Origin: Rebecca billardiae RCC1528 | Lineage: Eukaryota; Protista; Haptophyta | Assembly (NCBI GenBank): GCA_965240325.2 | Contig: OZ251230.1 | Location: 1,674,001-1,738,000 of the forward strand | DNA: 64,000 nt | Direction of reading: 5' to 3' | Shown: positions 32,930 to 51,103 of the stretch, in pieces | Numbering within the stretch: the stretch's first letter is position 1 | Layout: every line of letters begins with the position of its first letter | The notes under the pieces: model-generated | Seen by the model: only the letters and a program-made list of their open reading frames with translations | What the model was told of the DNA's origin: nothing | Database searches by the model: none | Position numbers and translations under genes: made by a program

Positions 32930-35900
32930 TCAGGCACGGAACTCACTCGAATCCTCGCGGGTTGGCTGCGCCTCGTCGTCCGCGTCGTGTCCGTCGTCGC
33001 GCGCGCGTGCAGAGCGGTCGCGCGACCTGTCAGTCCCGGGCGCGGTGGAGCCGGGCGCTGGGGTGCCGGGCGCGGTGGAGGCCATCGCGAGGGAGGGCGC
33101 AGGCGAGCGAGGCCCGGCCGCGCGCCGCTCGTCGTGCTCCGGCGACGTGGGCGACGCCTCGAGCGCGGGCGGCATCCGGATCTCGCCGATGCGCCCGCCG
33201 TTGGGCTGGGGCGCGGGCGTGGGCGTGCCCATCGAGCCGGAGCTGCCCTCGCCGGTGCTCGACGTCGAGGTGGTGCTCCGCCGCTTCGCATCGGCGGGCG
33301 CGACGGGCGGCGGGCGGGCGGCGCCGAACGCGGGCAGCTCTGGCAGCTCCGACGTCGGCGGCCGAGTCGAGTTGCGGCTCGAGCCGCCGGGCGGCCCGCC
33401 GTCGGAGCGCATCGACGAGCGGCCCGAGCCGAGCGAGAGGTAGGAGAGGAAGGAGCGGGCCGTCTCCGCCGCGGCCATCGACGGCGCGCGCGACACGTTG
33501 GCGCCGTACATGGGCGAGGGGGTGGGCTCCTTGCTCGCGGTGTCGGCGGCATCGGCGCCGCCTGCGTCGGCGCCGCTGGCGTTGCTCTCGCGGAGCTCCT
33601 GCAGCTTGGCCAGGCGCGTGGCGCGCGCCGACGCGGACTCTGACCAGAAGGACCATCCTGAGAACGCGCTGCCGTGCGATCGCCGCGTGGTGAAATCGTC
33701 CTCCCGGCTGCTCTGCGCCTCGACCACGCCGCCGCTGCGAGCGTACCCGGCAGCGACAGGCGTGTGCAGCGTGGTGGCGGATGCGAGCGAGTCCTTGCGC
33801 TCGCGGACGAAGGCGGGGTTGGGCGTCCCGCGTGCCGCCGTCATCATCGGCGCGGACGAGTCAGGCGTGTCGGGCACGCGCGACGGCGTCTGCGGCGCCG
33901 AGTCCGGGGGCGCGTTGAGCAGCCCGCGCCCCTCGCCGCTGTCGCGCGTGTTGGCGACGCGCCGGCCTCCGAGCATCAGCCCGACGAGGCTCGGCCGTGT
34001 GCTGCGGTTGTGGCTGCTCGAGGGGCGCGAGGGCCGGTTCGAGCGGCCGAGGCCGACGCCGGGCACGTGCATCTCATCCTCGGCGTCGCTCGCGCGGCGC
34101 GAGCGCAGCGCGTAGATCTCGTCGACGATGCTCGCGTTGTTGCCCTTGCGCGCGCGCGTGAGCTTGGCTGTGCGCGCCTCGACCTGGCTCCCTTTCTTCG
34201 CGTTCACGCGGAAGAGCAGCAGCTTGTGCAGGTAGGTGATGCCCGGGATGAGCGAGATGGCGAGGGTGGGGATGAGGACGATCAGCGTGACCGCCACGTC
34301 CGCAAGCAGCCAGTACGCCGTCGCCGTGTCGCGCAGCACCGTGCGGAAGACGCGCTCGACGCGGCCGGCGCGAGCGTCGCTCTCGCGAGTGCCGGCGAGC
34401 CACGCCATCGTCGACGTCATCATGTGCAGCGCCGCGTACTGCAGCGCGAGCAGCAGCACCACCTGCTCCTGGCGCAGCACGCGCGTCGCCGCCCAGCCGG
34501 AGAGGCGCACGAACGAGCCGAAGAGCGCGTACACAACCACCGCGCCGACGTGCAGCGCGAGCAGCAGGAAGGCGGAGAGCACGTAGAACTTGGGCTCGCG
34601 CGAGCGCGTGTGCTGCCCCGAGCACGCGCGCAGGCCCGCGACGAGCCCGCCGACGATCAGGCACTGCAGCAGCGGCACGATGAAGAGGAAGAGCTCGAGC
34701 AGGTCCCAGCGCGCCGCGGTCGAGCGCGCGCGATTGTCCAGCTCGGACGCCGCCGAGCTCGGCGAGACGAAGTTGTCCGCGCTCATCGAGTTGGCGAGCG
34801 CGTGCTCGTGCGTCGTGCTCAGCAGCATCTCCTTGGCGAGCGCGAGCAGCAGCACCGTCGCGATCGTGTACCGGCCGGGCTGCGCGAAGCTCCACGCGCC
34901 GCGCTTGGCGACGTCGTCGAGCGCGTGCCGCTCCCACGCGAGCCAGCCGGCGCGCTCGCTCGCGAGCACCCACCGGCCGAAGCCGCCCCAGTCGTCGCGC
35001 AGCACCTCGCGCAGCCCGAAGCCGGTCGGGTTGAAGATGAAGGGCGCGTACAGCCACGAGCCGACGAGCACGGAGACCGAGAACCAGAAGGGGAAGCGCG
35101 GGAGCACCTGCGGCCGCGAGCACAGCGTCATCGCGAGCAGCGTGAACAGTTCCGCCGCCGGCTGCAGGTTTGCGTGCGCGTACGCGCGGAACTGCTCGTG
35201 GTACGGCTGGCGCGCCGTCTGGATGCCGCGGCCGGTCGCCATGTACTGCGCGCCGCCGCTCGAGATCTCCTTGCGGTACGAGTACCCGATCCACTGCGCC
35301 TGGAAGGTGAAGAAGGCCCACGAGAAGGTGAGCAGCTGAGAGACAAGCGCCCACGCGCCCGTGAGGATTCCCTTCTCCAGCGCCTCCTCAAAGAAGAGCG
35401 GCAGCGCCTGCGCGAGCACCCACAGCAGGCAGATCGGCCCAAACTGCGCCTCGAGCACGAACGAGGCGACCAGCGCGTACGTGCGCTGCTGCCCCTCGCC
35501 CTGCCCGTCCACGACGGTCGGCCCGACGTACTCCGGCGGCGGCGGGCGCAGCTCCGCGTCGCACAGCACGAAGTAGAGCAGCATGAAGACAAACGTCCAC
35601 AGCGAGATCTCCATCAGCACCGGCGTCAGATAGAAGGCGATGTGGCCGTACCAGAACGCGAGCTGCCGGCCGAACGGCAGCCGCGTGCCCATGCGGTACG
35701 CCTGGCGCGTGAGCGACATCTCAGCGCAGCCGCGGCTCAGCTTGGACATGAACTTGAGCTGCCCGCCGAACGACATCTCGCGCCCCTTGCCCACCTGCAT
35801 GTACTCGCGGTGGATCACGTTGCCGCCGCGCAGCATCAGGTCCATCCCGGCGAAGATGTCCTCGGAGAGGTTGAGCCCCTTGGTCGCCTTGGAGACGCCG

Positions 35901-38900
35901 CCCTGCGCCATCATCGTCAGCTTCTCCATCACGTCCGGGTGGCCGTAGTACTGCCGCGAGATGAGCGGCCGGTCCATCGTGCGCTGGAACAGCGTGCCAA
36001 ACACGTACTCGGACGACGCGGTGAAGTGCGCGATCGTGCCGAGCGACGAGTACACGTGCTCGCGGAAGCCGAGGATCGAGATGCGCTCGCGCGTGCCCGT
36101 CGGGTCGAGCTCAAACTCGCCGAGCGCGTTGCAGATCTTCAGCGCCTCCTCGAGGTAGCCCTGCGGCGCAGGCGGCGGGCGGCGGGCGGCGGCGCGTGAG
36201 CCGCTGGGTTGCGCGCGCGAGCGTGCGCGCCGGCGTGCGCGGCGCGCGCACCTCCTGGTTGGAGTCGATCGTCTGCACGAGGCGGCCGCGCACGAACTGC
36301 ATCGCCACGTTCTGGTTGTCGCCCTTGCCGTCGCCGAGGATCGGGTGGCCGGGCAGCTCGACGCGGATGCGCGGCTCGCGCCGACCGTTCGGCGCGCGGC
36401 GGCACGAGGAGTCGATGAGGCACGCGTACCAGCGCTTGCCGTACACCGCGCTCTCGTCGAGCTCCTCGTCGATGAAGGCGATGTTGAGCCGGGGGAACTC
36501 GCCGAGCAGCATGTCCGTCGCCTCGAGGAACTCCGCGTCGAAGTGCGCGTACCGCTGCATCGAGACGATGCACTGGAACTTTCCCTTGATGACCTCGATC
36601 CGCTGCGCGTGCGAGAGGTCGGGCCGCTGCACGGCGAGCAGCAGGTGCATCGCCTTCTCGTACTGCATCATGCCGCGCACGGTGCGGTAGAGCGTCTGCG
36701 TGCGCATCGACGCCCACTTGCGCAGCGGCATGATCTGCCGGCGCAGCCGCGCCGCCGCGAGCGGCGCGTCGGCCGGCGAGCCCTGCACGGTCGGCAGCTG
36801 CGGCACGTACGGGCCCGGGGTCTTGGGCTCGGCCGAGCCGTCCGCGCTCGGCAGCGGCAGCAGCGGCGAGCTGCGGCTCGGGCTGGTGACGAGCTGCGAC
36901 TCGCACGAGCGGTGCGACTCTGTGTTCGTCGCCGAGCGCCCGTCGACGAACGACGAGTTCTGGTCGGTCTCCGAGCGGTAGGTGTGCCGGCCGGGCTCGG
37001 CGGAGGGCGCGCCAGGCTGCGCGGCGGGCGGCGCCTCCACCGCGCCCGCGCCGCTCGCCGCCGACGTGCGGAGCTTGGGCGACGCCGGCCCGCACCGCCC
37101 GCGCGCGATCGGCGACGGCCCGGCGGAGGCGCGCGTGGAGAGGCTGGGGCCCAAGCGCCTGCGCGTGCCCGGCGTCTCCGCGTCGGCGCCGCTGCGGCGC
37201 GCGCCGCCGGCCGCGCCCGCGCGCGACTTGCGCGCGCTCGCCAGCACGCCGTGGTTCAAGTCGGCGCGCTGCTTCTCCGTCAGCCGCGTGCTCTGTTGCG
37301 CGATGCGCGCGAGCTCCGCGGCCTCGTACTCGCCGCCGTCCTCGAGCCGCGCGGCCGCCGCCTCCCAAATCCGGTGCCACCGCCGCTCGCCCAGCCGCGA
37401 GCGGAAGCAGTCGAGCTCGTCCGGAAAGTACTCGATCAGCAGCGCGATCAGCGGCTCGGGCTCGTCCGAGAGCGCCGCGCCCGCCGAGCGCGCGCCGCGC
37501 ACCTTGGCCGCGTCGGCGACCTTGGTGAAGAGCTCGTCCTCCGAAAGGATGATCGTCTCGGAGTAGTGCGGGATGAGCACGGTGAACGCCGGCACGGCCT
37601 CGAGCGGCTGCGGCTGCGGCATCGGCATGGCGAGCGTGCGCATCCAGTACGTGAGGCGGCGGCGCGCCTCGCTCGACTCGGGGAGCAGGTGGTCAGCGGG
37701 CACGCGCGCGGACGACTGCAGCAGCTCGGGGCGCGTGGGCGAGGTGGCGGGCATGCGCTCGCCCGTGTCCTTGTCGACCACCATCCCGTCCATCAGCACC
37801 TCGTCCGCCTTCACGTCCTCGTACCGCAGCCGGCGCAGCTCCTCCACGGTGAGGTGGTCGCCGTCGAAGAGCGCGACCACGATGGCGTTCCACACCTTGG
37901 CGAACTTGCGCTCGAGCACCGGGTGCATCGGCTCGAAGAGCCTCTTGTACACGTCGGGCGAGGAGGGCGTGTCGATGGCGAAGAGCTGCGCGACCGCTGC
38001 GGCGGGCAGGTCGCACATCCGGCGCAGCGGCACGGCCTTCGCCGCGCCGTTCGGGCCCTCGAGCTTGAGGATCCACAGCCCGCGCGCCGTGCCGTACACG
38101 CACACGCCGAGCACGTACCAGAAGTAGGTGGAGGCGCAGTGCGGCAGGAACGCGGCCATCCACACGACCGCCTGCTGCATTGTGCGCGAGAAGAGAACGC
38201 GCGACGTGTGGAGCTCGGCGTACAGCGAGCGCTCGAGGAAGGGCTGCAGCGGCTGCGCCTCCTCGAGCAGCGCCGTGCCGATCGCGACCGCGCGCAGCAG
38301 CACCGTCGTCTCCATCGCGCACTTGGCGGAGAAGACGAGCACCCAGAAGAGAACGAGGCCGAGCGCCGTCCGGCGCGGCGTGTACACGTTCGCGTCGAAC
38401 TGCGCGAGCTTGCGCCGCACCGAGCGCGGCACCATCGTCGTGCGCACGACGATGAAGGCGGAGACGAGGAGAAACGTGCCCACCAGCAGCGGCTCGTCCG
38501 GCCGCGGCCAGTTCGCCGCGAGCATGCCGAAGAGGACGAACTGGATCGCGTACGGCAGCGTCTTGTCATACTCGAGCAGAACGGTGAGCGCGGTGTGCGA
38601 CGCCTTCACCTCAGACTTGCACGCGTCCGCGGTGATCTGCACGAAGGAGGGCATGAGGAAGCCGCCCCACAGGAAGAGCGACGACGACGGCCGCACCCAC
38701 GCGCCCGTCGCGTAGATCCGCAGCGCGATCAGCACGAGCGCGTAGAACGCGACGAAGTGGTAGATGGCGATGCGCGCATACCCGGCGATCACGTTGTGCC
38801 AGGAGTGGCACTCGATGTGCACCTTGCACCCCTTCATCGTGCGCTCCCAGTCGACGCGCGCGAGCGCCGCCCAGCGCTCGGACGAGGGCGCGTCGAGCAC

Positions 38901-41900
38901 GGGCTCGCCCGTCATCGTCACGACGCGCCGCACGCCCTTGGGCGTCCACACGAGCTCGTTCCAGTCGTCATAGTTGTAGAGCGCCTTCTCGCCCGGCGCG
39001 AGCGGCCGGTCGACCGGCCGCCCGTCCGGCCCGAGCCCGGAGAACATCGCGCCGAACATGTGCCGGTACAGCGGGATCACGTAGTCGCGCAGGTAGTTGC
39101 CCTCGGGCGTGCAGCCCGAGCGCTTGCCGAACTCGGCCCACATCTCGTCCGAGCTGGTCATCTTGGTGCGGCGCGCGTTGTGCGGCGCGAGCTGCGCGGT
39201 GCTCGACTCCGCGCGCATCAGCGCGCCCGCGGGCGCCTCGGGCGGCGCCGGCGCCGAGCTCGCCGCGCCGCCGAGCACCGCGAGCACGTTGTGCCGCGCG
39301 ACGCGGCCGCGGAGCACGTCGTCGCCCGCCGGCGTGTGCCCGCCGCTCAGGCTGCGGTGCACGTCTCCCTCGAACCCCGACTTGCGCGAGAAGCGCTTCG
39401 AGCGGCCGGACGGAGCGGACGGCGCCTTGCTCGCGGCCGGGTCGGACTGCGCCGCGCGCGACACCTCCTGCGCGTTGCGCACGTGCTGCAGCGCGGCGAG
39501 CTGCAGCTGCGGGATCGGCGGGATCGGCGCGCGCGACAGCGCCGTGTCCGGCGAGCCGCACACGCCCCAGCCCGCGCCGCCGCCGCCGCTTCCGCCGGCG
39601 CGCGCGCTCGCGGCCGGCGTCGACGCGACCGACTCGGCATACGCCGGGACCATGTCCACCTTCGCCTCCGAGCTGCGCCCCATCCGCCCCGCGAGGCCGG
39701 CCGGCTCGGCCGCCGCGCCGCCGAGCAGCTCGAGCCCGACGCCGGGCAGGCCCCAGGTGCCGCCGAGCTCGAGGGCCGCGGCCTGCTGCAGCTCGTCGAG
39801 GACGGCGAGCCGGCGCGAGCGCTCCCACGCCTGCGCGTCGTACGCCGCGACCGCGTCCTCGCCGTCATCCTCGTACGCGGCGTCGTCGTCGTCGCCCTCG
39901 GCGAGGCGCTCCATCGCGCTCGACCACTGCTCGAGCCACACCGCCTCGGCGTGCGGCACGCCCGCCGCGCCCGCCACGCCGCCGCCGGGCAGGCCACTCT
40001 CGGCGACGCGCTTGAGCACGCGCATGCCGTCCGCCCACGCCGCCTCCCACTTTTCACTCTCCTTGGCGTCGTTGTCCGCGCTCGCGAGCGAGCGTAGGCC
40101 GTCGAGCGCCTCGCTGATCTTGCGCGCCTGCCAGGCGGGCGCGGCGGCCGAGCGCGCGCGAGCGTCGCTCAGCGAGTTGAGGTCGGCGATCGCGCGCAGC
40201 GTGCGGTTGCGCCGGCGCTCGCCCATCAGCATCTCGCGCTGCGTCATCTCGCGGAGCCGGGCGAGCGCGCTCGCGCGCTTATTGATCAGCCAGCGCCCGT
40301 CGTCCGCGTCGCCCGACTTGGCCTCGGCGACGGCCGCCTCCTCCAGGTCGGCGAGCAGCGTGGCGAGCTCGGCGCGCCGCGCCGCGCGCGCGTTCGCGCC
40401 AGCGTCCACCGCCTCCTCGAGCGGCCCGGCGTCCTCGTCCTCGTAGCCCCAGTCGTCGTCGATCTTGCCCGCAGACGGGTTCTCGCGCTCGTCCGCTGTC
40501 GACTCGCGGCCCGACTCGCCGCCCCAGTCCGAGCCGTTCTCGAACGACTGCTCCGCGTCCGTCACGCCGAGGTACGCCAGGTGTGACAGGCAATCGCGCG
40601 CCCACTGCCGCTCGCCCTCGAACGCGTACTTGTCGTCGACGAGGCGCTGGAGCTCCGCGCGCGCGCGCGCGCGCGCGGCGATCACGTCCGAGAGTGCGCG
40701 CGTGCCGCCCTCCTGCCGCGCGACGTCGGCGAGCTCCTCAAAGCAGCGCTCGACCGCGCGGTCCCACGGCCCTCCGGGCTTCTCCCACGGCGCCTGGTCC
40801 TCGTCGAGCGCGCGCAGCTCGGCGATCGAGATGAGCGCCCACGCGCGGTCCCACTCGGCCTGCTCGACGGGCGTGTGCGTCGAGGAGGCGAGTTTGCGCA
40901 GCTCGGAAACGGCGTCGTGCGCCCACTGCCGCGCGCGCGCGTGCTCGCCGCCCGCGCCGCCCGAGGACGGGCTGCCCGCGCCGCCGCCGACGCCGACGCG
41001 CGCGCCGCCGCCGGCCTCGTCGTCCGAGGACGAGTCGGACGCGGAGTCAGCCGCGTGCATCAGCTGCAGCGCCGAGCGCGACGCGAGGTCCTGCACGTCG
41101 CCGAGCGCGTTGAGTCGCATCACGCGCACCCACGCGCCGCCGTCGCCCGCGCCCGGCTCGGCCGCGGCCGCGCTCTGGAGAGAGCCGACCGCCTGCAGCC
41201 GGCGCTCGCGCAGCGCGTCGCGCTCGCGCTTGCGCCGCGCCGACACGACGGCGCCGGTGAGCGAGCCGCGCGCCATCTTCGGCTTGAGCGCGGAGGAGGA
41301 GGCCGAGTGGTCGTGCGACGCGCGGCGGCCCTCGTGCTTCGGCGCGCCGGCCTTCTGCTGGCCGGCGACGCGCGCCTCGGCGCGCTCGCGCTGCGTCTCG
41401 CCCTCCGTGGGCAGGAGCGCGCGGTACTGCTCGCCCGGCCGGCCGGAAGCGATCGAGCCGAGGCCCTCGAGACGCGTCGTCGTGCGCGCGGTGCGCGCCG
41501 TCTGGTGCCCGCGCTCCTTGAGCCCGTGGAACGAGACGCGCGCGCGCCGGATGAAGTCCGACTTGCGCGCGGGGCGGCTGTCCGGCGCGGGGCCCTTCGC
41601 CACGCGCGCGCTCGGCGTGGCGTCGAGCGCGCCGAACCGGCCGGCTTGCTCGGGCGAGTGGCCGATGCTCGGCGAGGCGCCGCCGGAGAGCGCGTTGTGC
41701 CGCAGCTGCGTCAGCTTGGCCGAGGAGCGGCGCGAGCGGCCCGCGTCGTCGTGCTGCGAGCTACCACGACGTGAGCTGCCGCCGCACGAGCACGCGCTAC
41801 CCGAGGCGTGCAACGCGCCGTGGCACGAGCAGCCGCCGCGCGAGCCGCGCCGCGCGCCGCCACCGCCGCCGCTCGCGCCGAGCGCCGCCGCACTCGCCGT

Positions 41901-44900
41901 GTGCAGCAGCCCGCCGCCGCCGCTCAGCTCGTCGACGACGAGCGCGTTGCTGCTGCTGGCGTGCAGCGCACCCGCGACCGGAAGCAGCGCATCCTGCGCG
42001 TGGTGCCGCGCGCACTCGAAGAAGAAGCAGAGAATCTCCGGGCAGAAGCGCAGGTTGCCCGCCTCCGCCCACAGGCAGAGGTAGAGCGCCATCTCGTGCA
42101 GCCGCTGCGTGTGCGACGGCGTGCGGTACTTGACGAAGACCACCTTCTTCTTGCGCTCGAAGGACCAGAGTCCAGCAGACGTGTCCAGCCAGCGCTCAAA
42201 GGACTCGAACATGAGCAGGTGCAGCTGCTCCGCCGCGAGGTTCTCGTCGCCGCACGAGGACGTGTGCGACGCCCACAGCTGCAGCAGGTGCTCGTGCTGC
42301 GCGACCACCGACGGGCGCTGGAAGCCGAACAGGCACTGCAGCTGCGCGAAGTGCGCGCGCAGCTCGGCGCGCGCCGAGCGCGAGATCTTGACGCGCGTGC
42401 GGCACGCGTTCACCAGCACGACCGCCGCGCTTGCCGCGCTGCCGGGCACGCCGTACGGCGCCGCGCCCGCGGCCTTGGCGCTCTTGGCGCGCGCCGCGCC
42501 GCCCGTCAGTCGCACCACCGCGCGCGCGGCGACGCGCCAGCCCAGGAAGCCGCGCCGCTTGTCCGCCTTGCTTCGGCCGCCGTGCCGCGAGTGGCGCGCG
42601 GACGCCGCCGCCGCCGAGGTGCGCGAGCCGCGCGAATGGCGCTGCTCGGCGGTCGCGGCGGCCGCCGCGCCGTCCGCCGCGCCGTCCGCCGCGGCGGCCT
42701 CCGCCGCCGCCGCCGCCGCCGCCTCCGCGCGCGACGCCTTGCGCAGCTGCTGCTGCCGCTTGAGCTCGGCGAGCCGCGCCGCCTTGGCGCGCTCGTTGCG
42801 CGTGCGACAGCACAGGACGAGAAGGACAGCCCAGAGCACGAGCGCAAAGACGACGGCGAGGAGCCACGAGAGCGGGTAGCGCGACTCGCACTGGCCCGTG
42901 CGGATGAGCGTGTTGCAGCACTCGCGCCCGCCCGCGATGTCGATCGCCCACGCCTGCAGCACGTGGTTGGCGCGCTGCCGTATCGTGCAGCCGTGGTACC
43001 GCCCGCCGCGGCGCACGTCCACGCACGCGGCCTCGGCGACCGAGCCCTCAAGCAGCGCGCACTGCGCCTCGATCAGCTCCTGCAGCTCGGCGTACGAGTG
43101 GTTCACGAGCACCTTGCACCGCCGCGCCTCGTTCACAGGCTCGAGCAGCCCGAGCTCCGTCGTGTTCACGTAGCCCTCGGCGAGCGGCGCGCACACGCGC
43201 GGCCAGCCGACCGCGGGCACGAGGCACTTTGGCCCCGTCCAGCCGGCCTCGCACCTGCACACGCCCGTCTCGGCGGCGCCCTTCTCGGCCGGCGGCACGC
43301 GCGCGCACGAGCCGTGCTCGCCGCACGTGCTCCCGCGCGGCCGGTCCGGGTCGCACGCGTGGCCGCCCGCGATCACGGGCTTGATGGCCTCGCGGAGCGC
43401 GCCCTCCTCCCACACCTTGTCGCCGTCGCCCCACGCGACGTAGCGCTCCTGGTGCTTCTCGATGTAGTCGGCGGTGGGCAGGTCGTCCGGGTCGCAGTCG
43501 ACCTTGACGCCGCCGCCGCTGCCGTCCTCGTCGCGCTGGTACACGCGCACGTAGTCGATCTCGTAGTCCTCCGGCAGCTCGGCGCAGAGCCGCGCGAGCC
43601 ACTCCCGGTCGTTCACGACGCGGCCGTCCTCTTTCTCCACGAGGCACGTCGTGCACTCGGAGCGCTTGCAGTCCGTGCAGCAGTCGCAGTGGTCCGGGCA
43701 GTCGGCCCAGCCCCACAGAGGGCCGAGGTCGATGTTGAGGATGAGGTACATCGCCTCGTCCGGCATCTTGCGCGGCAGCAGCGTGCCCTCGTCCACGAGC
43801 TCGCCCGTCACCGGGTCGTCGAACGTCATCGGCCGCGGCTTGGTGATGATGGACGCGGGAACGTGATACTGCATCTTGTCGTCGAGAGTGTAGTGCACAA
43901 ACCCGTCGTCGCCCGTGCGCCACTCGCACTGGTACTTGTGCTGCGACTCGAAGTGCGTCGGGCTGAGCATCGTGTTCGCCGAGAGCGCGTCCGTGTGCAG
44001 CCGCTTGCCGTTGGGGAAGTACTCGTCTCCCCAGAACCAGTAGCTGCGGCGCGCGCGGGCGGCGGGCGCGGGCGGAGGGCGGAGGCGTGCAAAGATGGCA
44101 GACACACAAGGCGGCGGTGAGCGCGGCGTGATGTGCGGCCGAGCTGGCGGGAGGCCGCGGCACGCCGGGCACGCCTCGCGACAGCGTCCCACCACGCCCG
44201 CCGTCTCAGCCCCCGCCCCGCCCCCGCCCGCGCGCACGCGCGCCCCCCGCCCGCTGCGCATCGGCCCGCGCCCGCGCCCGCGCGCGCGGCGCGCACTTGA
44301 TCGCGACGTCGTATTCCGTGCCGTAGATGGGGCCCTCTGGGCCGTAGTTCTCCGGGCGCGGGAAGACCTCGTCATAGTACTGCATGCGCGTCGAGCCGTC
44401 GCCCGGGTGGACGAACTCGGCGGGCAGGCAGCCCAGCTTCGGCCGCTCCATCGCGTCCGGGTGCTGGCCCGGACCGAGCTGGACGGACGTCGAGATGAGC
44501 GGCTGCTTGGTCGCTATCAGCTGCATCGTCACGTTGTCGATCGGCGGGCACTCGCCCGAGTCGATGCGGAACTGGTAGTCGAAGGTGAAGTCGCCGGGCA
44601 TCACCTCGACGATGTCGATCTCCGGCGCGCCGCGCCCGTGCTCGAAACCCTCCAGCTCGTCGCACTTGTTCAGCAGCTGCGTGCCGAACTGATTTGCATC
44701 ATGGTTCTTGTTTGCGGGGCACTGCGCACAGCCGCACACGCGCAGGCGGGACGGCCGAGGCGTGCGCGAGAGAGACGCAGAGAGGAAGGGAGAGCGAGGT
44801 GTCAGGCGGCGGCGCGCGGCCGGCGCGCGCCGCGCCGCCCCTTCCGCACCAGCCGCCCCGCCGCGCGCGCGCGCGCGGCGCGTGCGGCGCGGCACCTGGT

Positions 44901-45486
44901 CGAAGTTGAACGGCCAGACGTTGTCGGTGCTCTCCTTGAACGTCGCGCGCCCCAGGTTGCCCATCATCCAGAAGGCGGGCCAGGTGCCGCCGATGTCGCT
45001 CTTGCCCGGCATCTGGGCGGAGAGCTCGATGTACCCCTCCGTGAAGCAGAACTTGTTCCACGACTGGATCATCGCCGACTGGTACGTGCGCTTCAGGTCC
45101 TTGTCGTACGGCGCCGTCCAGTCGTTCTGGTTCACCGTCAGCTTGAGCTTGCCGGCCTCGGTGCGCGCGAGGGTCGAGTTGTACGCGTTGTACTGCATGT
45201 TGGAGAAGATCGGCCCGTTCAGCCCCGTCCACTTCGGGTCGTCGCCGTCGTGGAACGTCCGCCCCTCCACCTCGAACTCGTCGCTGAACACGAGCCGGTA
45301 CTTGGTGCCACGCACCGTGATCTCGCGCGCCTCCTTGGGCGTGTCCGGATCGACGAACTCGTCAGCGTCCCATTTGCCAGGTCGGTCGGCCGCGCTCGCG
45401 CCGAGCACGGCGAGCGCCAGCGCGAGCGCTCGCGCGTGCCTCGGCCCGAGGGCGCGGCCCCTCGCGGCTCGTGGCGGGCCCCCCAT
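32930..45486 (-). CDS. KRE6/SKN1-type GH16 + EGF-like + GT48 1,3-beta-glucan synthase fusion (~4012 aa; exons 45486..44896, 44721..44297, 44043..36252, 36160..32930)
   Basis: Signal peptide; LVFSDEF, YQSAMIQSWNKFCFTEGYIE, WPAFWMMGNLGRA, GRGAPEIDIVE, YEIDYVRVYQ (SKN1/KRE6 GH16); CRCEAGWTGPKC; TM; LFGFQ..V, ALYLCLWAEAGNLRFCPE, NYDDWNE (FKS1 domain); WASMRTQTLYRTVRG, ILGDGKGDNQN, QTIDSNQEGYLEE, GVSKA..LNLSEDIFAG, QVGKGRE (GT48). All three GT-AG introns keep the frame. Confidence 0.88.
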
Positions 45487-46316
45487 GTCTGGGCCCCCAC
45501 GCTGATCCCAGCTGCTGCTCGCCAAGCTGCTTGCCCGTGCTGCACGAGCTTCGGCTCGTGAGGTCAGCAGCTTCGTGCATCAACTACTTGAAAACGCGCG
45601 AGACGTTCATCATTTGCTTCTCCACTGACGATTATTGTATCTAGCCTCGGGGATATGATAGGATGCTGGATGAATATGGCAGCCCAATTTTTGGTGTTGC
45701 CAAGACGTGCTATTTTGGACACGCGATCTGATTGGCCTACTCCCGCGCGGGCTGGCAGTGTCATATTGGGATCGGACTCCCCTCAAAACCGTTAACCTCG
45801 TTGAAACGGCCCGATCCCCCGGACTTGCATGAACACCACATCCGGACCGATCCACCCGTCCCAGAAAGCCCATGAGCCCGTCCCGGCTCAGCGGGCTCAT
45901 GACATTCCCCGTTCCATGGAAGGTCATGAGCTCCCGGACACAGTGCGCGCAGGTGCGCCTCGAGGCGAGATGAGCACCAAGGCCCGTCACAGCGCCCGTC
46001 GCGCGCGCTTGACTGCGGCGGCTGAGATGGCTGGAGCGGCGGCGCGTTGCGCTCATCCGCTCAGCCGCCCTCAGTGCACACGTGTAAATAAGCGACCTTC
46101 GGCGCAGCAGACATGTGCCGCCTTGCGGGCCCTCCTCCGCCTGCTAGCGCGGCTCGACTGCAACGGTCGCCAAAGCCAAGCATTGCCTACTGAGTCCGCT
46201 TCTGCCCGCGACACGCGCTCGAATGGCGCCTTGAGCGCGCGCGCATTGGAAACATATACACTCAGGCCCCTCTCTCCCGAGACAGCGCGCGCCTGGCTCC
46301 GCCTCCAGCGTACTGT

Positions 46317-46861: not shown

Positions 46862-48322
46862 TCACTCGACCTCTGCGATCACGACGGTCATGTTGTCCGA
46901 GCCGCGGCCGCCGCGGGTCGCGCTGCGCAGGCACGCGTCGAGGAGCGCCGCGCACACGGACGACGTGGGCGCGGCCGCGCCGAGGCGGCGGCGCTCCGCG
47001 CGCACGCGCTCGAGCGCCGCCTGCGTGGACATGCAGTCCCACACGCCGTCACTCGCCAGCAGCAGCAGGTCGCCGCGCGTGAGCCCGCTCGCGGTGCGCA
47101 CCTCCGGGTACGGCACAAGCACCTGCTCGGCCGCAGGCCTCGGCGCGGCCTTGAACTTGAGCGAGCCGATCGCGCGCGAGCACGCGAGCACGCCGGCGAT
47201 CCGGCCGTGGGCGTCGACGGTGGAGTGCGGCGTGTCCGCGAGGAGGATGCGGCGCTTCTCCTCCGCCAGCGTGGGCCGATGCTCCGTCGTGAGCTCCACC
47301 GTCGCCGCCGCCGCCGCTGACGGCTCCGTGCCGTCAGCCGCTGCCTGTCGCTCAAGAACGCCCCGACATGCGCCAGCGTTGGCGACCGCGACCGAAATGT
47401 CGCCCTCGGTGCCGCGGCGCACGACGGCGCACACGGCGGTCGAGCCGCACTCCCACGCGTTCACCGCCGTCGCGTCGCGGATGCGCGCCGCCATGATCGC
47501 CGTGTCGCCCGCTGCCGCCGCCGCCGCCGCCGCCGGTGCCGCCGCCGCGTCCTGCTGCCAGCCACGCACCGCCCCGGCGGCCGCCGCGCACGCGCGCCGA
47601 GCAACGCCCCGCGCGCGCTCGCGGGCGGGTGCGCCTGCGGCGAGGGCGGCGGCAGCGAGCGCCGTTCCGACGAGCGCGCCGCCGACGAGCGCGAGGGCCG
47701 TTCCCAACGTGCCGCCACCCGCCCGAGAGCTCAACGCGCGTCTGGGGGCAAAGGTGAGAGCGATCGCTGCAGCCATCGCGGCCGCTACTGCGCGCTCCGG
47801 CGCTCGCCTCGGCTCGGCCGGTGGCACCGCTGAGCCGGGGGCGGCCGCGGACGCAGCGGCCTGCACGCACGGGAATGCGCCCTCGGGTCGTGAGAGCGCG
47901 TCCGCCTTCGCCGCCTCGCGCAGCCGCGCGCCCTCCGCCAGCGCCGCGTCCATCGCGACAAACGTGGCCTGCAGCGCGTCGTTCACGTCGCCGAGCTCGG
48001 CGGCCGCCGCGCAGTACGCCTGGCGCATGTGCCGCGCGCAAAAGTCTGCGACGTCTGCGCCACCGTGGCCGTCGAGGACCGCAAAGAACGCCTCGTCCCC
48101 CGCCCGCGACACCGTCGCGTCCAGCGCGTCCTCCTGCGCGCGCCGCCAGCCGCGCACGCGGCAGCCGCCGAGCCGCAGCCAGCCATGCGGCGCGACCACG
48201 TCCAGCACACCGGTCTTGCTGCTGTCCAGCTCGTCGGCGTAGAGCGTCGAGACGGCCTCGCTGCGCGCGCCGCTGCCAGGCAGGCGCGCGCTCGACCACA
48301 GCGCCGCGAACGACTTGGACAT
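46862..48322 (-). CDS. PP2C/PPM-family Ser/Thr phosphatase (atypical)
   Basis: GWRRAQEDA, FAVLDGHGG, CGSTAV, EHRP, GRIAGVLACSRAIG, LASDGVWD, DNMTVV motifs in order. Confidence 0.88.
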   Translation of the reverse strand: MSKSFAALWSSARLPGSGARSEAVSTLYADELDSSKTGVLDVVAPHGWLRLGGCRVRGWRRAQEDALDATVSRAGDEAFFAVLDGHGGADVADFCARHMRQAYCAAAAELGDVNDALQATFVAMDAALAEGARLREAAKADALSRPEGAFPCVQAAASAAAPGSAVPPAEPRRAPERAVAAAMAAAIALTFAPRRALSSRAGGGTLGTALALVGGALVGTALAAAALAAGAPARERARGVARRACAAAAGAVRGWQQDAAAAPAAAAAAAAGDTAIMAARIRDATAVNAWECGSTAVCAVVRRGTEGDISVAVANAGACRGVLERQAAADGTEPSAAAAATVELTTEHRPTLAEEKRRILLADTPHSTVDAHGRIAGVLACSRAIGSLKFKAAPRPAAEQVLVPYPEVRTASGLTRGDLLLLASDGVWDCMSTQAALERVRAERRRLGAAAPTSSVCAALLDACLRSATRGGRGSDNMTVVIAEVE

Positions 48323-51103
48323 CAGGGCGACCGTCCAGTAGTGTTTTGGCGGGCAACAATGCCGTGTCGCTCCGGCCTCCGAGCGAACGGGTGGCCCGGC
48401 GCATTTTGCGCGACGATTGAAGACTCTGCGCACCGGCGGGGCGGGTGCCGAGTCCGGGACTGCCGTCAACTTCAGGCTTCAGTTGGGAACTTGGGATGCG
48501 GATCATCCGCCCCTGTGCATGCATGACACGCTGTGGCCCAACGCACCACTCCACGGATGCCCGTGCACGCGCTGATACGGCGGGGTGGTGCACCAGCAGG
48601 GAGAGCCTAGAACGGGTTCGCCTGCGTTCCCACAGATCTGCTCTCCACTTCCGGCGCCGCCGCGCAGCGGCCTATTCGGAGTGCCCCGGTCAGCCACCGC
48701 CATGCGGCGGGACGGTAATGAAGCATCATGCATTTCAGACATGCAATCCGTGGCGGCAATCTCAACACAGGCATGCGGCTGTACGACACGCACGCCGGGC
48801 GACGGAAGTAGAGACCAGCAGGCCAACGACCTTTCTAGGCTCTTTCCTATGGTGCACCACCCAGCCCGGTACAGGCCGGCGCCAGTGCGCAGCCGATCAG
48901 ACCGGGCCGCAGCCGTCGGTCGCATGTGCCCGCCCGAAGAAGTGACATCTTTCCATGACTCGGTGTGTCATCGCCACTCTGCCTGTCAGCCGGCGTGGTG
49001 CCGCGGCGACCTGAGCCGGCTCCGAGGCTCAAACGCGCCCAGGGAATGGGATCGGCCATGACACATAAGGACCTGCCAGGCCTCGACACTCACACGTCGT
49101 TGTTGTTGGAGGCCGGAAGGGTGGACTGGACGTTACAGAAAAGAATACGAAGGAATCAGGAGTGAAAGGGGCACCCGTGGCGTTTCACGCATATGCTTTT
49201 CATTACGACTGGTCATCATTCAAAACGACATCCGCGATTCCGCGGTTTCCGTAATGTTGTCGGCCCGCCTCGGCGAGCGACCAACTTCTACGCCCCGTCA
49301 AACATTATTATCCCCGAAGCACACGATCTACCACACCCACACCCTAATTCTAATTCTACTACCCGATTGGTCACAATTTTACCGCGAATCCGCGCCAAAA
49401 TCCAAGTTCTACTCCGGCAGACGAAATCCGAAAGTGCGTACGCGGGTAAGCCCCTCACGATGATAGGACGGTCACCTGTGGAACGTTTTAACCGCAGATG
49501 ATGTACAGATTAGCTTCCAAATAGCTTGGTTAAAAACGTCCTTACCGAGGCTACGGCGCAAGGACCAGAGATGGTCCTTTGCTACGGCAGACTTACACGA
49601 TGATTAATCAGGGGCCTTAATCAGCTACCTGCTCAATTGGCGAACAGTTCATCTGCTCGGAGATTTCATATGCACCCGCAACGGTAGGCGCGTTTCTCCA
49701 AGATTCTAGATCCAAGAACCCGACTGAGACGACGAGCGAACCCCGGCCAGCCTTTCCCAGTTTGGGCGAGATGCGTCCCGTCTCCGCTCCTGCGCGCTCG
49801 TCGTCGAGCACCGAGGTGAGCTTCGCGGGGTGAAGCCCGCGCCGCGATGCGCCCAAGCTCCAACTGCCCGCCTCACCACTCACTCTGGTTCCTCCCCCCT
49901 CCCCTGGCCCCGCCCTCCCCATCGCAGTCATCGAACCTTGCGACGGCCATCTGCAAGCGCCGCCGAGTTGCGCACGATGATGTGGCCAAGGCGCAGCCAT
50001 CTCCGATACCCGCTGCTGCGGGGCAGCTGGCGGGTAGACGCGTCTGGCGTGGCGATCTGGCGAGCGCACCTGGCTCTGGGCCCACCTCTCGGTCCACTGG
50101 CGGCGCGCTGTCCTGGACTGACTCGCACAGCTCGGACAGCCCCACGTCAGAGGCGGATGCCGCCTTGCTGATCGATGCCACCCTCCGCGAGCACTGCGTT
50201 GGCTTGGCCGCGCATATCGTCTTCTTCTCGATGGTCCCTTCACCGTCCACAGCACACGTCGCGCTCATCAACGCGCTCGGCGCTGAGCTCGCATGCGCAT
50301 CGGATCTGCTCACGCGCCGGCTAATGGAGCGACGGCGCTCGGCTGCGAGTGGGGCCGTGCACACGGCGCCCGTCACAGCTGTCAGGGCGATGTGCCCACG
50401 CTTTCCGCAGCCCACTCTGGCAAGTGTGCCCCCCGTGATCGATGCGCCCTAGGACAACTCTCGTTATGGATACCGCTGTGTCATCGTCGCCGACGCGGCT
50501 GAGCGCGGGCGCAGCGGCGCCGGCTCGGGCGGCAGCCGCTACTCCGGGGCGGCTGCGACCACGGGCGTGGCGCGGCGGCCGTGGACATCACAGATCGCTC
50601 GCCCTCAGGCCACCGCCGACTCAGTTGTACGGAGTCCGCAGCGCTCGGAGTATAGCGCATATTGGTAGCCGCACAATATAGGCTGACGACGAGTGACGGC
50701 GCCGCACTAGTCAGTATAACTAGTATCGTCAGACTGAGCAGTCACTCTGATATTGTGAAGTCAGACGAGCCGGCGAATAATGCGATGTCAAACTCAAAGA
50801 CAAAGACAGACCGGGTACCGTACGGATTCGCGCATCATGTCCGCGGGTGCCGACCATCGTCTGACTGCTTAGTGCGCCAGCTGACTGAGTCAATGACGAT
50901 GAATGACGACACCGTGTCCGACTGACTGAGACTGACTCACTGACTACTGAGTACTGTCGTCACTGAGTACTGAGCGGTAGACGGGTACGCGGGGTGAGTT
51001 AGAGCCGAGGCCCCGAGCGCCGACTCGACTGATCAGTCGTCATCAGTCAAGTCCGCGGCCGGGGCCGAGGCTGCGCGGAGCCGGTGCGCCCAGCACCACC
51101 GGC

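What the first reader, a model, noticed from the sequence alone, without database searches (positions are those of the whole stretch)
32930..45486. Single ~4,000-aa gene fusing a KRE6/SKN1 GH16 transglycosylase to a GT48 beta-1,3-glucan synthase
Seen: the second half of the GH16 domain, an EGF-like motif, a TM helix and the FKS/GT48 domains lie in one uninterrupted exon (44043..36252), so the fusion does not depend on my splice model. The GH16 EIDxxE catalytic motif is intact. Known: in fungi, FKS synthases and KRE6/SKN1 are separate proteins. Inference: the signal peptide puts GH16 in the lumen, where it could branch or remodel glucan extruded by the same polypeptide, making a one-protein storage-glucan machine. 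Similar fusions may already be known in some algae; I cannot check this here.
Basis: partly seen in the sequence, partly recalled or inferred. Interest (0 to 1): 0.72.

Follow-up and report, generated by a model that had tools for sequence, protein, structure and literature searches.

The report
Glucan synthase fused to branching enzyme
This GC-rich haptophyte alga has a real gene of about 4,012 codons that ties a Kre6-type glucan-remodelling (GH16) domain, through a cysteine-rich stalk and one membrane helix, to an Fks-type beta-1,3-glucan synthase. It is one of eight such genes in the genome, and the design has so far been described only for oomycetes.

Summary
On the minus strand, 45486..32930, four exons encode about 4,012 residues. 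In order they give a signal peptide, a SKN1/KRE6 GH16 domain with an intact EIDIVE motif, a Cys-rich/EGF-like stalk, one TM helix, FKS1_dom1, six TM segments, the GT48 catalytic domain and a C-terminal TM bundle.

Exon 3 (44043..36252) alone joins the end of GH16 to GT48. Its third-codon GC is 0.92-0.99 throughout, so it is coding and not a chance open frame.

The same architecture is found elsewhere:
- two MMETSP transcripts
- a transcript-like JGI contig
- an intronless metagenomic gene
- at least ten database clusters
- a Picozoa fragment
- an Aphanomyces protein

The genome is a haptophyte by its 18S probe site. It holds seven paralogs of this type plus one of the oomycete type. Trees place the algal type apart from the oomycete fusion in both domains.

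This copy is unusual for a 966-residue low-complexity insert inside the cytosolic Fks N-domain.

Function (synthesise and branch in one chain) is inferred. The scan had already found two paralogs on other pieces of this genome. I class it as a new variant of a known kind, of moderate interest.

The parts
44896..45486 (-). Exon 1: start codon, signal-peptide-like N-terminus (about 45388-45486) and the first part of the GH16 (SKN1/KRE6) domain
   Evidence: There is an in-frame stop 36 codons upstream of the ATG. tblastn against P0001 covers residues 19-178 at 64% identity.
44722..44895 (-). Intron 1 (174 nt, GT..AG, 83% GC)
   Evidence: The P0001 alignment resumes without loss of residues.
44297..44721 (-). 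Exon 2: middle of GH16, with the catalytic motif EIDIVE at 44605-44622
   Evidence: R-G-A-P-E-I-D-x-x-E is nearly invariant in 22 relatives.
44044..44296 (-). Intron 2 (253 nt, GT..AG, 84% GC). The split codon AA|C restores a family-conserved Asn.
43437..44043 (-). Start of exon 3: C-terminal part of GH16, including a Cys-rich insertion (43584-43700) typical of the algal fusion type
42915..43328 (-). Stalk: EGF-like motif (43221-43328) and a Cys-containing helical module ending in CCN...C
   Evidence: The AlphaFold model of ortholog P0001 shows a small beta module and then a helical bundle before the TM helix.
42807..42863 (-). Single transmembrane anchor (LLAVVFALVLWAVLLVLCC)
   Evidence: hydropathy 3.15.
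41994..42806 (-). Cytosolic linker, then the first half of the Fks N-terminal domain (FKS1_dom1 positions 2-38)
   Evidence: 63% identity to P0001 841-974; GC3 0.95-0.98.
39096..41993 (-). 966-residue low-complexity insert (Ala/Gly/Ser/Arg-rich, with W-x3-W helical motifs) splitting FKS1_dom1. It is specific to this copy.
38058..39095 (-). Second half of FKS1_dom1 and six hydrophobic segments equivalent to Fks1 TM1-6
36252..38057 (-). GT48 catalytic domain, first part (end of exon 3), with a second low-complexity insert at 36756-37304
36161..36251 (-). Intron 3 (91 nt, GT..AG, 88% GC)
   Evidence: The junction ..DSNQE|GYLEE.. matches P0001 1773|1774.
32930..36160 (-). Exon 4: rest of the GT48 catalytic domain (35621-36160), the C-terminal TM bundle (34241-35620), a low-complexity tail and the stop codon
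   Evidence: yeast FKS1 7xe4 residues 1142-1513, E 2.8e-55.

Best explanation
This is one intact gene encoding a membrane enzyme of about 4,012 residues, made of two catalytic modules on opposite faces of one membrane.

Steps shown by sequence:
- A signal peptide sends the N-terminus across the membrane.
- A Kre6/TGS-type GH16 domain with an intact E-x-D-x-x-E motif sits on a Cys-rich, EGF-like and helical stalk.
- One TM helix returns the chain to the cytosol.
- An Fks-type beta-1,3-glucan synthase follows, with its N-domain, six TM segments, GT48 domain and C-terminal TM bundle.

Steps inferred:
- The GT48 part polymerises UDP-glucose in the cytosol and threads beta-1,3-glucan through its own channel.
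- The tethered GH16 domain, held next to the exit, cuts and re-joins the emerging chain to make beta-1,6 branches or links.
- In a haptophyte the likely product is the branched, beta-1,6-rich storage glucan in a vacuole. A cell-surface glucan is not excluded.

The gene looks like a stand-alone type-I TGS joined by its cytosolic tail to the N-terminus of a GT48 synthase. This algal type is separate from the oomycete fusion. The 966-residue cytosolic insert of this copy lies at a loop site that varies from 0 to about 250 residues in the paralogs. It is probably a disordered, paralog-specific regulatory or docking loop.
For: One gene:
- A continuous frame with GC3 of 0.92-0.99 across the stalk, TM helix, linker, insert and GT48.
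- Colinear BLASTP to P0001 over all parts.
- The same architecture in two MMETSP transcripts marked complete, in a 7.4-kb contig with short leader and trailer, in an intronless 2568-residue gene on a 19-kb metagenome contig and in six further proteins.
- At least ten 50%-identity clusters bridge the junction.
- Seven colinear paralogs in this genome; in C3 and C20 all matches lie in one reading frame, and the SKN1 and GT48 hits fall in one open frame.

Intact domains:
- 76 of 78 GT48 and 54 of 55 GH16 family-conserved columns are kept. The one GH16 miss is the Asn restored by splicing.
- The EIDIVE motif is present.
- The sequence matches the solved yeast FKS1/GSC2 structures.
- The model of the ortholog's ectodomain has pLDDT 88.6, and its best PDB matches are GH16 laminarinases at probability 1.00.

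Topology.

Functional coupling of a Kre6-like GH16 protein with a beta-1,3-glucan synthase to make branched glucan is shown in S. pombe (Ghs2-Bgs3, PMC13612389). A haptophyte Kre6 homolog is needed for storage glucan (PMC10543733).

Haptophyte identity: the PRYM02 probe site is exact in all five full-length 18S copies found on C20.
Against: - No transcript, protein or activity data exist for this organism.
- Localisation and product are inferred by analogy.
- Internal transcription starts or proteolytic processing that would separate the two modules cannot be excluded.
- The signal peptide and TM helices were judged by hydropathy only.
- The GH16 fold was modelled on the ortholog P0001, not on this copy, because its GH16 domain is split over three exons and the joined protein was not submitted to any tool.
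- The large low-complexity inserts could lower or alter the activity of this particular paralog.
Confidence: 0.72

Rival explanations
1. The fusion gene is real, but it builds or remodels a cell-surface or scale-associated beta-glucan at the plasma membrane, as in fungal and oomycete walls, rather than vacuolar storage glucan.
For: Fungal Fks and Kre6/Ghs2 act at the plasma membrane (PMC13612389). The topology is the same for the plasma membrane and the tonoplast. Eight fusion paralogs plus three stand-alone GT48 genes leave room for several different products.
Against: No beta-glucan wall is described for haptophytes, according to PMC10543733. Diatom and haptophyte TGS proteins are placed at or predicted for the vacuole (PMC10543733).
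Confidence: 0.2
2. The polypeptide is made as one chain and then cleaved in the linker or the insert, so the mature enzymes are a separate TGS and a separate synthase (a polyprotein-like arrangement).
For: Long, poorly conserved, low-complexity linkers follow the TM helix. Stand-alone TGS proteins of about 550 residues with the same stalk and TM helix exist.
Against: No conserved cleavage motif was seen in the alignment. Keeping the fusion in at least ten divergent clusters suggests that the covalent link itself is selected.
Confidence: 0.08
3. Two adjacent genes (a TGS and a GT48) are bridged by a chance open frame in GC-rich DNA, or this copy is a decaying paralog.
For: At 73% GC long spurious ORFs occur, for example 1312 codons on the antisense strand. 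This copy carries unusually large inserts.
Against: The chance of the open linker is about 8e-4, and of the whole exon about 1e-18. Codon periodicity is continuous. Transcripts of relatives carry both domains. There are no stops, and 76 of 78 and 54 of 55 conserved columns are kept.
Confidence: 0.03

Closest known systems
Oomycete GH16-GT48 fusion, e.g. Aphanomyces stellatus '1,3-beta-glucan synthase' KAF0699966.1 / A0A485KNF9 (P0076); mentioned for 'certain oomycetes' in PMC13612389
   Same: The same domain order in one chain: SKN1/KRE6 GH16, then FKS1_dom1, then Glucan_synthase.
   Different: Its GT48 part belongs to another lineage, with the fungal Fks proteins lying between the two; the AU test gives p = 3e-10. 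Its GH16 part falls outside the clade of algal-fusion GH16 domains. It lacks the Cys-rich insertion in GH16. The window's genome has its own oomycete-type copy on another contig.
S. pombe Ghs2 (Kre6-like GH16) with Bgs3 (GT48), the bipartite synthase-remodeler module (PMC13612389)
   Same: A Kre6-type GH16 enzyme coupled to a beta-1,3-glucan synthase to make branched beta-glucan. The window gene is the covalent version of that pairing.
   Different: In S. pombe these are two separate polypeptides. Fungal Kre6 is a type II membrane protein, whereas here GH16 is type I (signal peptide at the N-terminus, TM helix after the domain).
Haptophyte PhTGS and diatom TGS1/TGS2 (stand-alone Kre6 homologs; PMC10543733)
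   Same: Signal peptide, SKN1 GH16 domain, TM helix and cytosolic tail. The first 800 or so residues of the window protein have this layout.
   Different: The stand-alone proteins stop after a short tail. Most stand-alone-length relatives (about 520-750 residues) form a sister clade, apart from the clade that holds all the algal-fusion GH16 domains.
S. cerevisiae FKS1/GSC2 (PDB 7xe4, 9wzs)
   Same: Homologous N-domain, TM1-6 region, GT48 catalytic domain and C-terminal TM region. 76 of 78 conserved columns are kept.
   Different: The yeast proteins have no luminal GH16 module or extra N-terminal TM helix. They also lack the 966-residue and roughly 180-residue inserts.

Membership tests
GH16 (SKN1/KRE6/TGS type, GH16_2) | Match to Pfam PF03935 above the gathering score | tested here: met
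   177.9 bits for exons 1-2 and 51.7 bits for the start of exon 3, against a cut-off of 30.
GH16 (SKN1/KRE6/TGS type, GH16_2) | Catalytic motif E-x-D-x-x-E | tested here: met
   EIDIVE at 44605-44622. E206, D208 and E211 of P0001 are nearly invariant in 22 relatives.
GH16 (SKN1/KRE6/TGS type, GH16_2) | Beta-jelly-roll fold of GH16 | tested here: met
   Tested on ortholog P0001 (66% identical in GH16), with the window's exons as rows of the alignment. pLDDT is 88.6, and the best PDB matches are GH16 laminarinases at TM 0.70-0.78 and probability 1.00. The window protein itself was not folded.
GH16 (SKN1/KRE6/TGS type, GH16_2) | Transglycosylase (beta-1,6 branching) activity | not testable with these tools
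   Needs an enzyme assay.
GT48 (Fks / callose synthase) | Match to Pfam PF02364 and PF14288 above the gathering scores | tested here: met
   216.3 and 291.5 bits for PF02364; 56.2 bits for PF14288, in two pieces because of the insert.
GT48 (Fks / callose synthase) | Family-conserved residues of the catalytic core | tested here: met
   76 of 78 columns conserved at 90% or more are kept. The two changes are L to M and G to A.
GT48 (Fks / callose synthase) | Fks1-like layout: cytosolic N-domain, six TM segments, GT domain, C-terminal TM bundle | tested here: met
   Three colinear matches to GSC2/FKS1 structures, with a TM region of equal length between them. Six hydrophobic segments and C-terminal segments. 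Hydropathy only.
GT48 (Fks / callose synthase) | UDP-glucose-dependent beta-1,3-glucan synthesis | not testable with these tools
   Needs an assay.
Oomycete-type GH16-GT48 fusion | Same domain order in one polypeptide | tested here: met
   compared.
Oomycete-type GH16-GT48 fusion | Common descent of the GT48 and GH16 parts with the oomycete protein | tested here: not met
   In the GT48 tree P0076 groups with C34 and C19a, away from the window's clade. The AU test gives p = 3e-10, though the group was named after the tree was seen. In the GH16 tree P0076 lies outside the fusion clade, which has 100/99 support.

The most novel reading that the evidence does not exclude
The algal-type fusions may be the missing polymerase-plus-brancher for the beta-1,6-rich storage glucan of haptophytes. 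No multi-spanning synthase has been identified for that glucan. The paralog-specific loops, from 0 to 966 residues at one site of the Fks N-domain, would then give each of the seven copies its own regulation or targeting. The fusion would also be an ancient invention found in haptophytes and other algal lineages (a junction-bridging fragment also comes from Picozoa), independent of the oomycete one. That would make it a natural 'Rosetta stone' showing that Kre6-type enzymes act directly on nascent Fks products.
Probability: 0.3. Interest if true: 0.75.

Novelty: new variant of a known kind. Interest (0 to 1): 0.55.

Why it matters
How beta-1,6 branches and beta-1,6-rich glucans are made is still unsettled, in fungi and in algae alike. 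A 2026 study showed that a Kre6-like GH16 enzyme works in strict partnership with one Fks-type synthase in fission yeast. It stated that the covalently fused form is restricted to oomycetes.

This gene and its seven relatives in the same genome show otherwise. A second, separately derived fused form is the main kind of GT48 gene in a haptophyte, and it occurs widely in marine eukaryote sequence data.

This gives direct candidates for the enzyme that makes the storage glucan of haptophytes, an important carbon pool in the ocean. It also offers a natural single-chain system in which coupling of synthesis and branching can be tested by mutating one domain at a time.

Tried and rejected
- The spliced protein was never joined for any search, fold or look-up. 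Exons were sent by reference only. Inside tree scripts, translated match pieces of each locus (this gene included) were strung together to make domain rows.
- The third word-index search (GT48 region) was swamped by fungal Fks proteins and gave little taxonomic help.
- Judelson 2017, the source for the oomycete fusion, is not held. Morris 2009 does not mention glucan at all, so the published description of the oomycete fusion could be checked only through PMC13612389 and the Aphanomyces protein itself.
- Pfam finds nothing in the 966-residue insert even at E = 1. A self-BLAST finds no internal repeats at 1e-3, and the paralogs have no homologous insert.
- The protein atlas gave only SKN1 clusters with scores below 0.9.
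- Insert as an in-frame intron: rejected, because GC3 is 0.92-0.98 against GC2 of 0.49-0.72, and because a 2.9-kb intron would be more than ten times longer than the three real ones.
- Chance ORF: rejected.
- A search of the held literature found no description of this fusion in haptophytes. That is absence from the held library only.
Full report
**1. What is there.** The region lies in DNA of about 73% GC. The minus strand holds three long open frames. Pfam assigns them, in order, to:
- SKN1/KRE6 (44206-45525, 3.5e-52)
- the end of SKN1, an EGF-like motif, FKS1_dom1 and the start of Glucan_synthase (36111-44375, 2754 codons)
- the rest of Glucan_synthase (32930-36055, 1.8e-86)

Reading the sequence gives three short GC-rich introns with GTGCGC donors and CGCAG acceptors: 44722-44895, 44044-44296 and 36161-36251. 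The four exons are 45486-44896, 44721-44297, 44043-36252 and 36160-32930. They total 197 + 141 + 2598 + 1076 = 4,012 residues. An in-frame stop lies 36 codons before the ATG. The next gene upstream is a PP2C phosphatase ending at 46862.

**2. Is it more than chance?** At this composition a stop is expected every 63 codons. The 2597 codons of exon 3 staying open by chance has probability about 1e-18. The 445 codons between the end of GH16 and FKS1_dom1 have probability about 8e-4. More telling, in-frame third-position GC is 0.92-0.99 in every 100-codon block of exon 3, against 0.38-0.73 for second positions. This holds across the stalk, the TM helix, the linker and both low-complexity inserts. 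The introns are 83-88% GC. The long antisense frames, such as 36159-40094, are the usual by-product of this codon bias.

**3. Support from relatives.** The spliced protein was not joined for any search; exons were sent by reference. Inside my tree scripts, translated match pieces of each locus were strung together to make the domain rows.
- A word-index search with the first 430 residues of exon 3 found two long proteins carrying PF03935, PF14288 and PF02364 together. One is an MMETSP transcript ORF marked complete (P0001, 2721 residues, with a second isoform P0003). The other is P0002 on a 7,452-nt, 70% GC JGI contig with a 37-nt leader.
- Exons 3 and 4 align colinearly to P0001 through GH16, stalk, TM helix, Fks N-domain, TM region and GT48. 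All three splice junctions fall on uninterrupted P0001 residues. The split codon at the exon 2/3 junction gives an Asn that is conserved in the family.
- A search with the ectodomain of P0001 found six more proteins with the same order of domains. One is an intronless 2,568-residue gene between unrelated genes on a 19-kb metagenome contig.
- A profile of the junction region, run against 1.8 billion representatives, found at least ten clusters that bridge stalk, TM helix and Fks N-domain. Among them are a Picozoa fragment and the Aphanomyces stellatus protein annotated as 1,3-beta-glucan synthase.

**4. The family in this genome.** The assembly is 72.0 Mb in 41 contigs. Six-frame searches with the two Pfam models, followed by tblastn, show seven colinear fusion genes: C13 (this window), C11, C24, C8, C3, C20 and C30. 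In C3 and C20 all P0001 matches lie in one reading frame, and the SKN1 and GT48 hits fall in one open frame. There are also three GT48 loci with no SKN1 hit nearby and at least three stand-alone SKN1 genes. An eighth, divergent locus on C19 is colinear with the Aphanomyces protein over its whole length. Two of the paralogs were already reported by this scan (s1-346345, s1-353077).

**5. The organism.** The haptophyte-specific 18S probe PRYM02 (Simon et al. 2000, listed in PMC7970053) matches exactly, on the strand complementary to the rRNA, in all five full-length 18S genes found on C20. The reversed control gives none.

**6. Are both domains intact?**
- The GH16 motif reads EIDIVE.
- Across 43 GH16 and 32 GT48 sequences, this copy keeps 54 of 55 and 76 of 78 of the columns conserved at 90% or more. 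That is as good as the fungal enzymes. The one GH16 miss is the junction Asn.
- Exon 4 and the end of exon 3 match the solved yeast FKS1 and GSC2 structures (E 2.8e-55 and 1.8e-59). Three colinear blocks leave a TM1-6 region of equal length.
- Hydropathy shows one strong TM helix after the stalk, six segments before the GT domain and a C-terminal bundle.
- The GH16 module therefore lies on the non-cytosolic side, where Fks-type synthases release their product.
- An AlphaFold model of the ortholog's first 700 residues, built from 22 rows that include this window's exons, has pLDDT 88.6. It shows a beta-sandwich, a small beta module, a helical bundle and a TM helix. Its best PDB matches are GH16 laminarinases.

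**7. What is special to this copy.** Between the two halves of FKS1_dom1 lies a 966-residue insert (39096-41993). It is rich in Ala, Gly, Ser and Arg, carries scattered W-x3-W helical motifs, and has no Pfam match and no internal repeats by BLAST. The same site holds 0 to about 250 unrelated low-complexity residues in the paralogs. A second insert of about 180 residues lies inside the GT48 region. Together with the tail, these explain why the protein has about 4,000 residues instead of the 2,400-2,700 of its orthologs.

**8. Relation to what is known.**
- PMC13612389 (2026) shows that S. pombe Ghs2, a Kre6-like GH16 protein, works only with the synthase Bgs3 and is needed for branched glucan. 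It adds that a single-chain GH16-synthase exists in certain oomycetes and is restricted to them.
- PMC10543733 shows that a stand-alone Kre6 homolog is needed for haptophyte storage glucan. It notes that no multi-spanning synthase is known for beta-1,6-glucan.
- My GT48 tree puts the window gene in a clade of algal fusions with 100/99 support, with P0001 nested among this genome's paralogs. The Aphanomyces fusion groups with the C19 locus and a stand-alone C34 gene in another lineage, and the fungal enzymes lie between the two.
- Forcing both fusion types into one clade is rejected, p = 3e-10, though the group was named after the tree was seen.
- In the GH16 tree all algal-fusion domains form one clade (100/99), distinct from a clade of stand-alone-length proteins. 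The oomycete-type domains lie outside both.
- The oomycete GH16 also lacks the Cys-rich insertion.
- The window gene therefore works like the oomycete fusion but is not a member of it.

**9. Mechanism.** Shown: the gene structure, the domain order, the intact motifs and the topology. Inferred: the synthase threads beta-1,3-glucan across the membrane, and the tethered GH16 branches or re-links it at the exit, most likely for vacuolar storage glucan. The rivals are a cell-surface product, post-translational cleavage, and a chance or decaying frame. They are listed with their odds in the rival explanations.

**10. Limits.**
- Localisation and activity are untested.
- Most relatives are unnamed environmental sequences.
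- The literature check covers only the held library.

Noticed in passing
window 39096-41993 (-): A 966-residue low-complexity insert splits FKS1_dom1. It contains about eight loosely similar helical motifs of the form W-x3-W or W-x(6-9)-L-x2-L. The paralogs have unrelated loops of 0 to about 250 residues at the same site.
   Followed up: partly
G000 C19:411400-426000 (L036+L037): A divergent eighth fusion gene is colinear with the Aphanomyces stellatus GH16-GT48 protein over its whole length. One haptophyte genome therefore carries both the algal type and the oomycete type of fusion.
   Followed up: partly
G000 C11:2412000-2424200 and C24:465100-477300 (L024-L027): Two fusion paralogs are almost identical in the conserved domains (tree branches of about 0.01) but differ in their loop inserts. 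This suggests a recent duplication between contigs.
   Followed up: no
P0067 (EukProt, Picozoa sp. SAG22): A 1,102-residue fragment from a Picozoa single-cell assembly bridges stalk, TM helix and Fks N-domain. The fusion thus seems to occur outside haptophytes and stramenopiles.
   Followed up: no
G000 C20:125800-353953: Five full-length 18S rRNA genes lie 25-82 kb apart rather than in a tight tandem array, and one is inverted.
   Followed up: no
window 46862-48469 (-): The upstream neighbour is a PP2C protein phosphatase gene (Pfam 8.6e-38). It leaves about 1.4 kb of intergenic DNA before the fusion gene's ATG.
   Followed up: partly
window 36159-40094 (+) and other antisense frames: Open frames of up to 1,312 codons run antisense to the gene. 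They are a by-product of GC3 near 0.97 and are not genes.
   Followed up: partly
P0004, P0010, P0011 (Phytophthora): Oomycete proteins of 1,700-2,700 residues match the GH16 query (27% of it covered) and carry SKN1 but no GT48 Pfam domain. This is a different expansion of the same GH16 type.
   Followed up: no
The 3' UTR may therefore run into that element.
   Followed up: no
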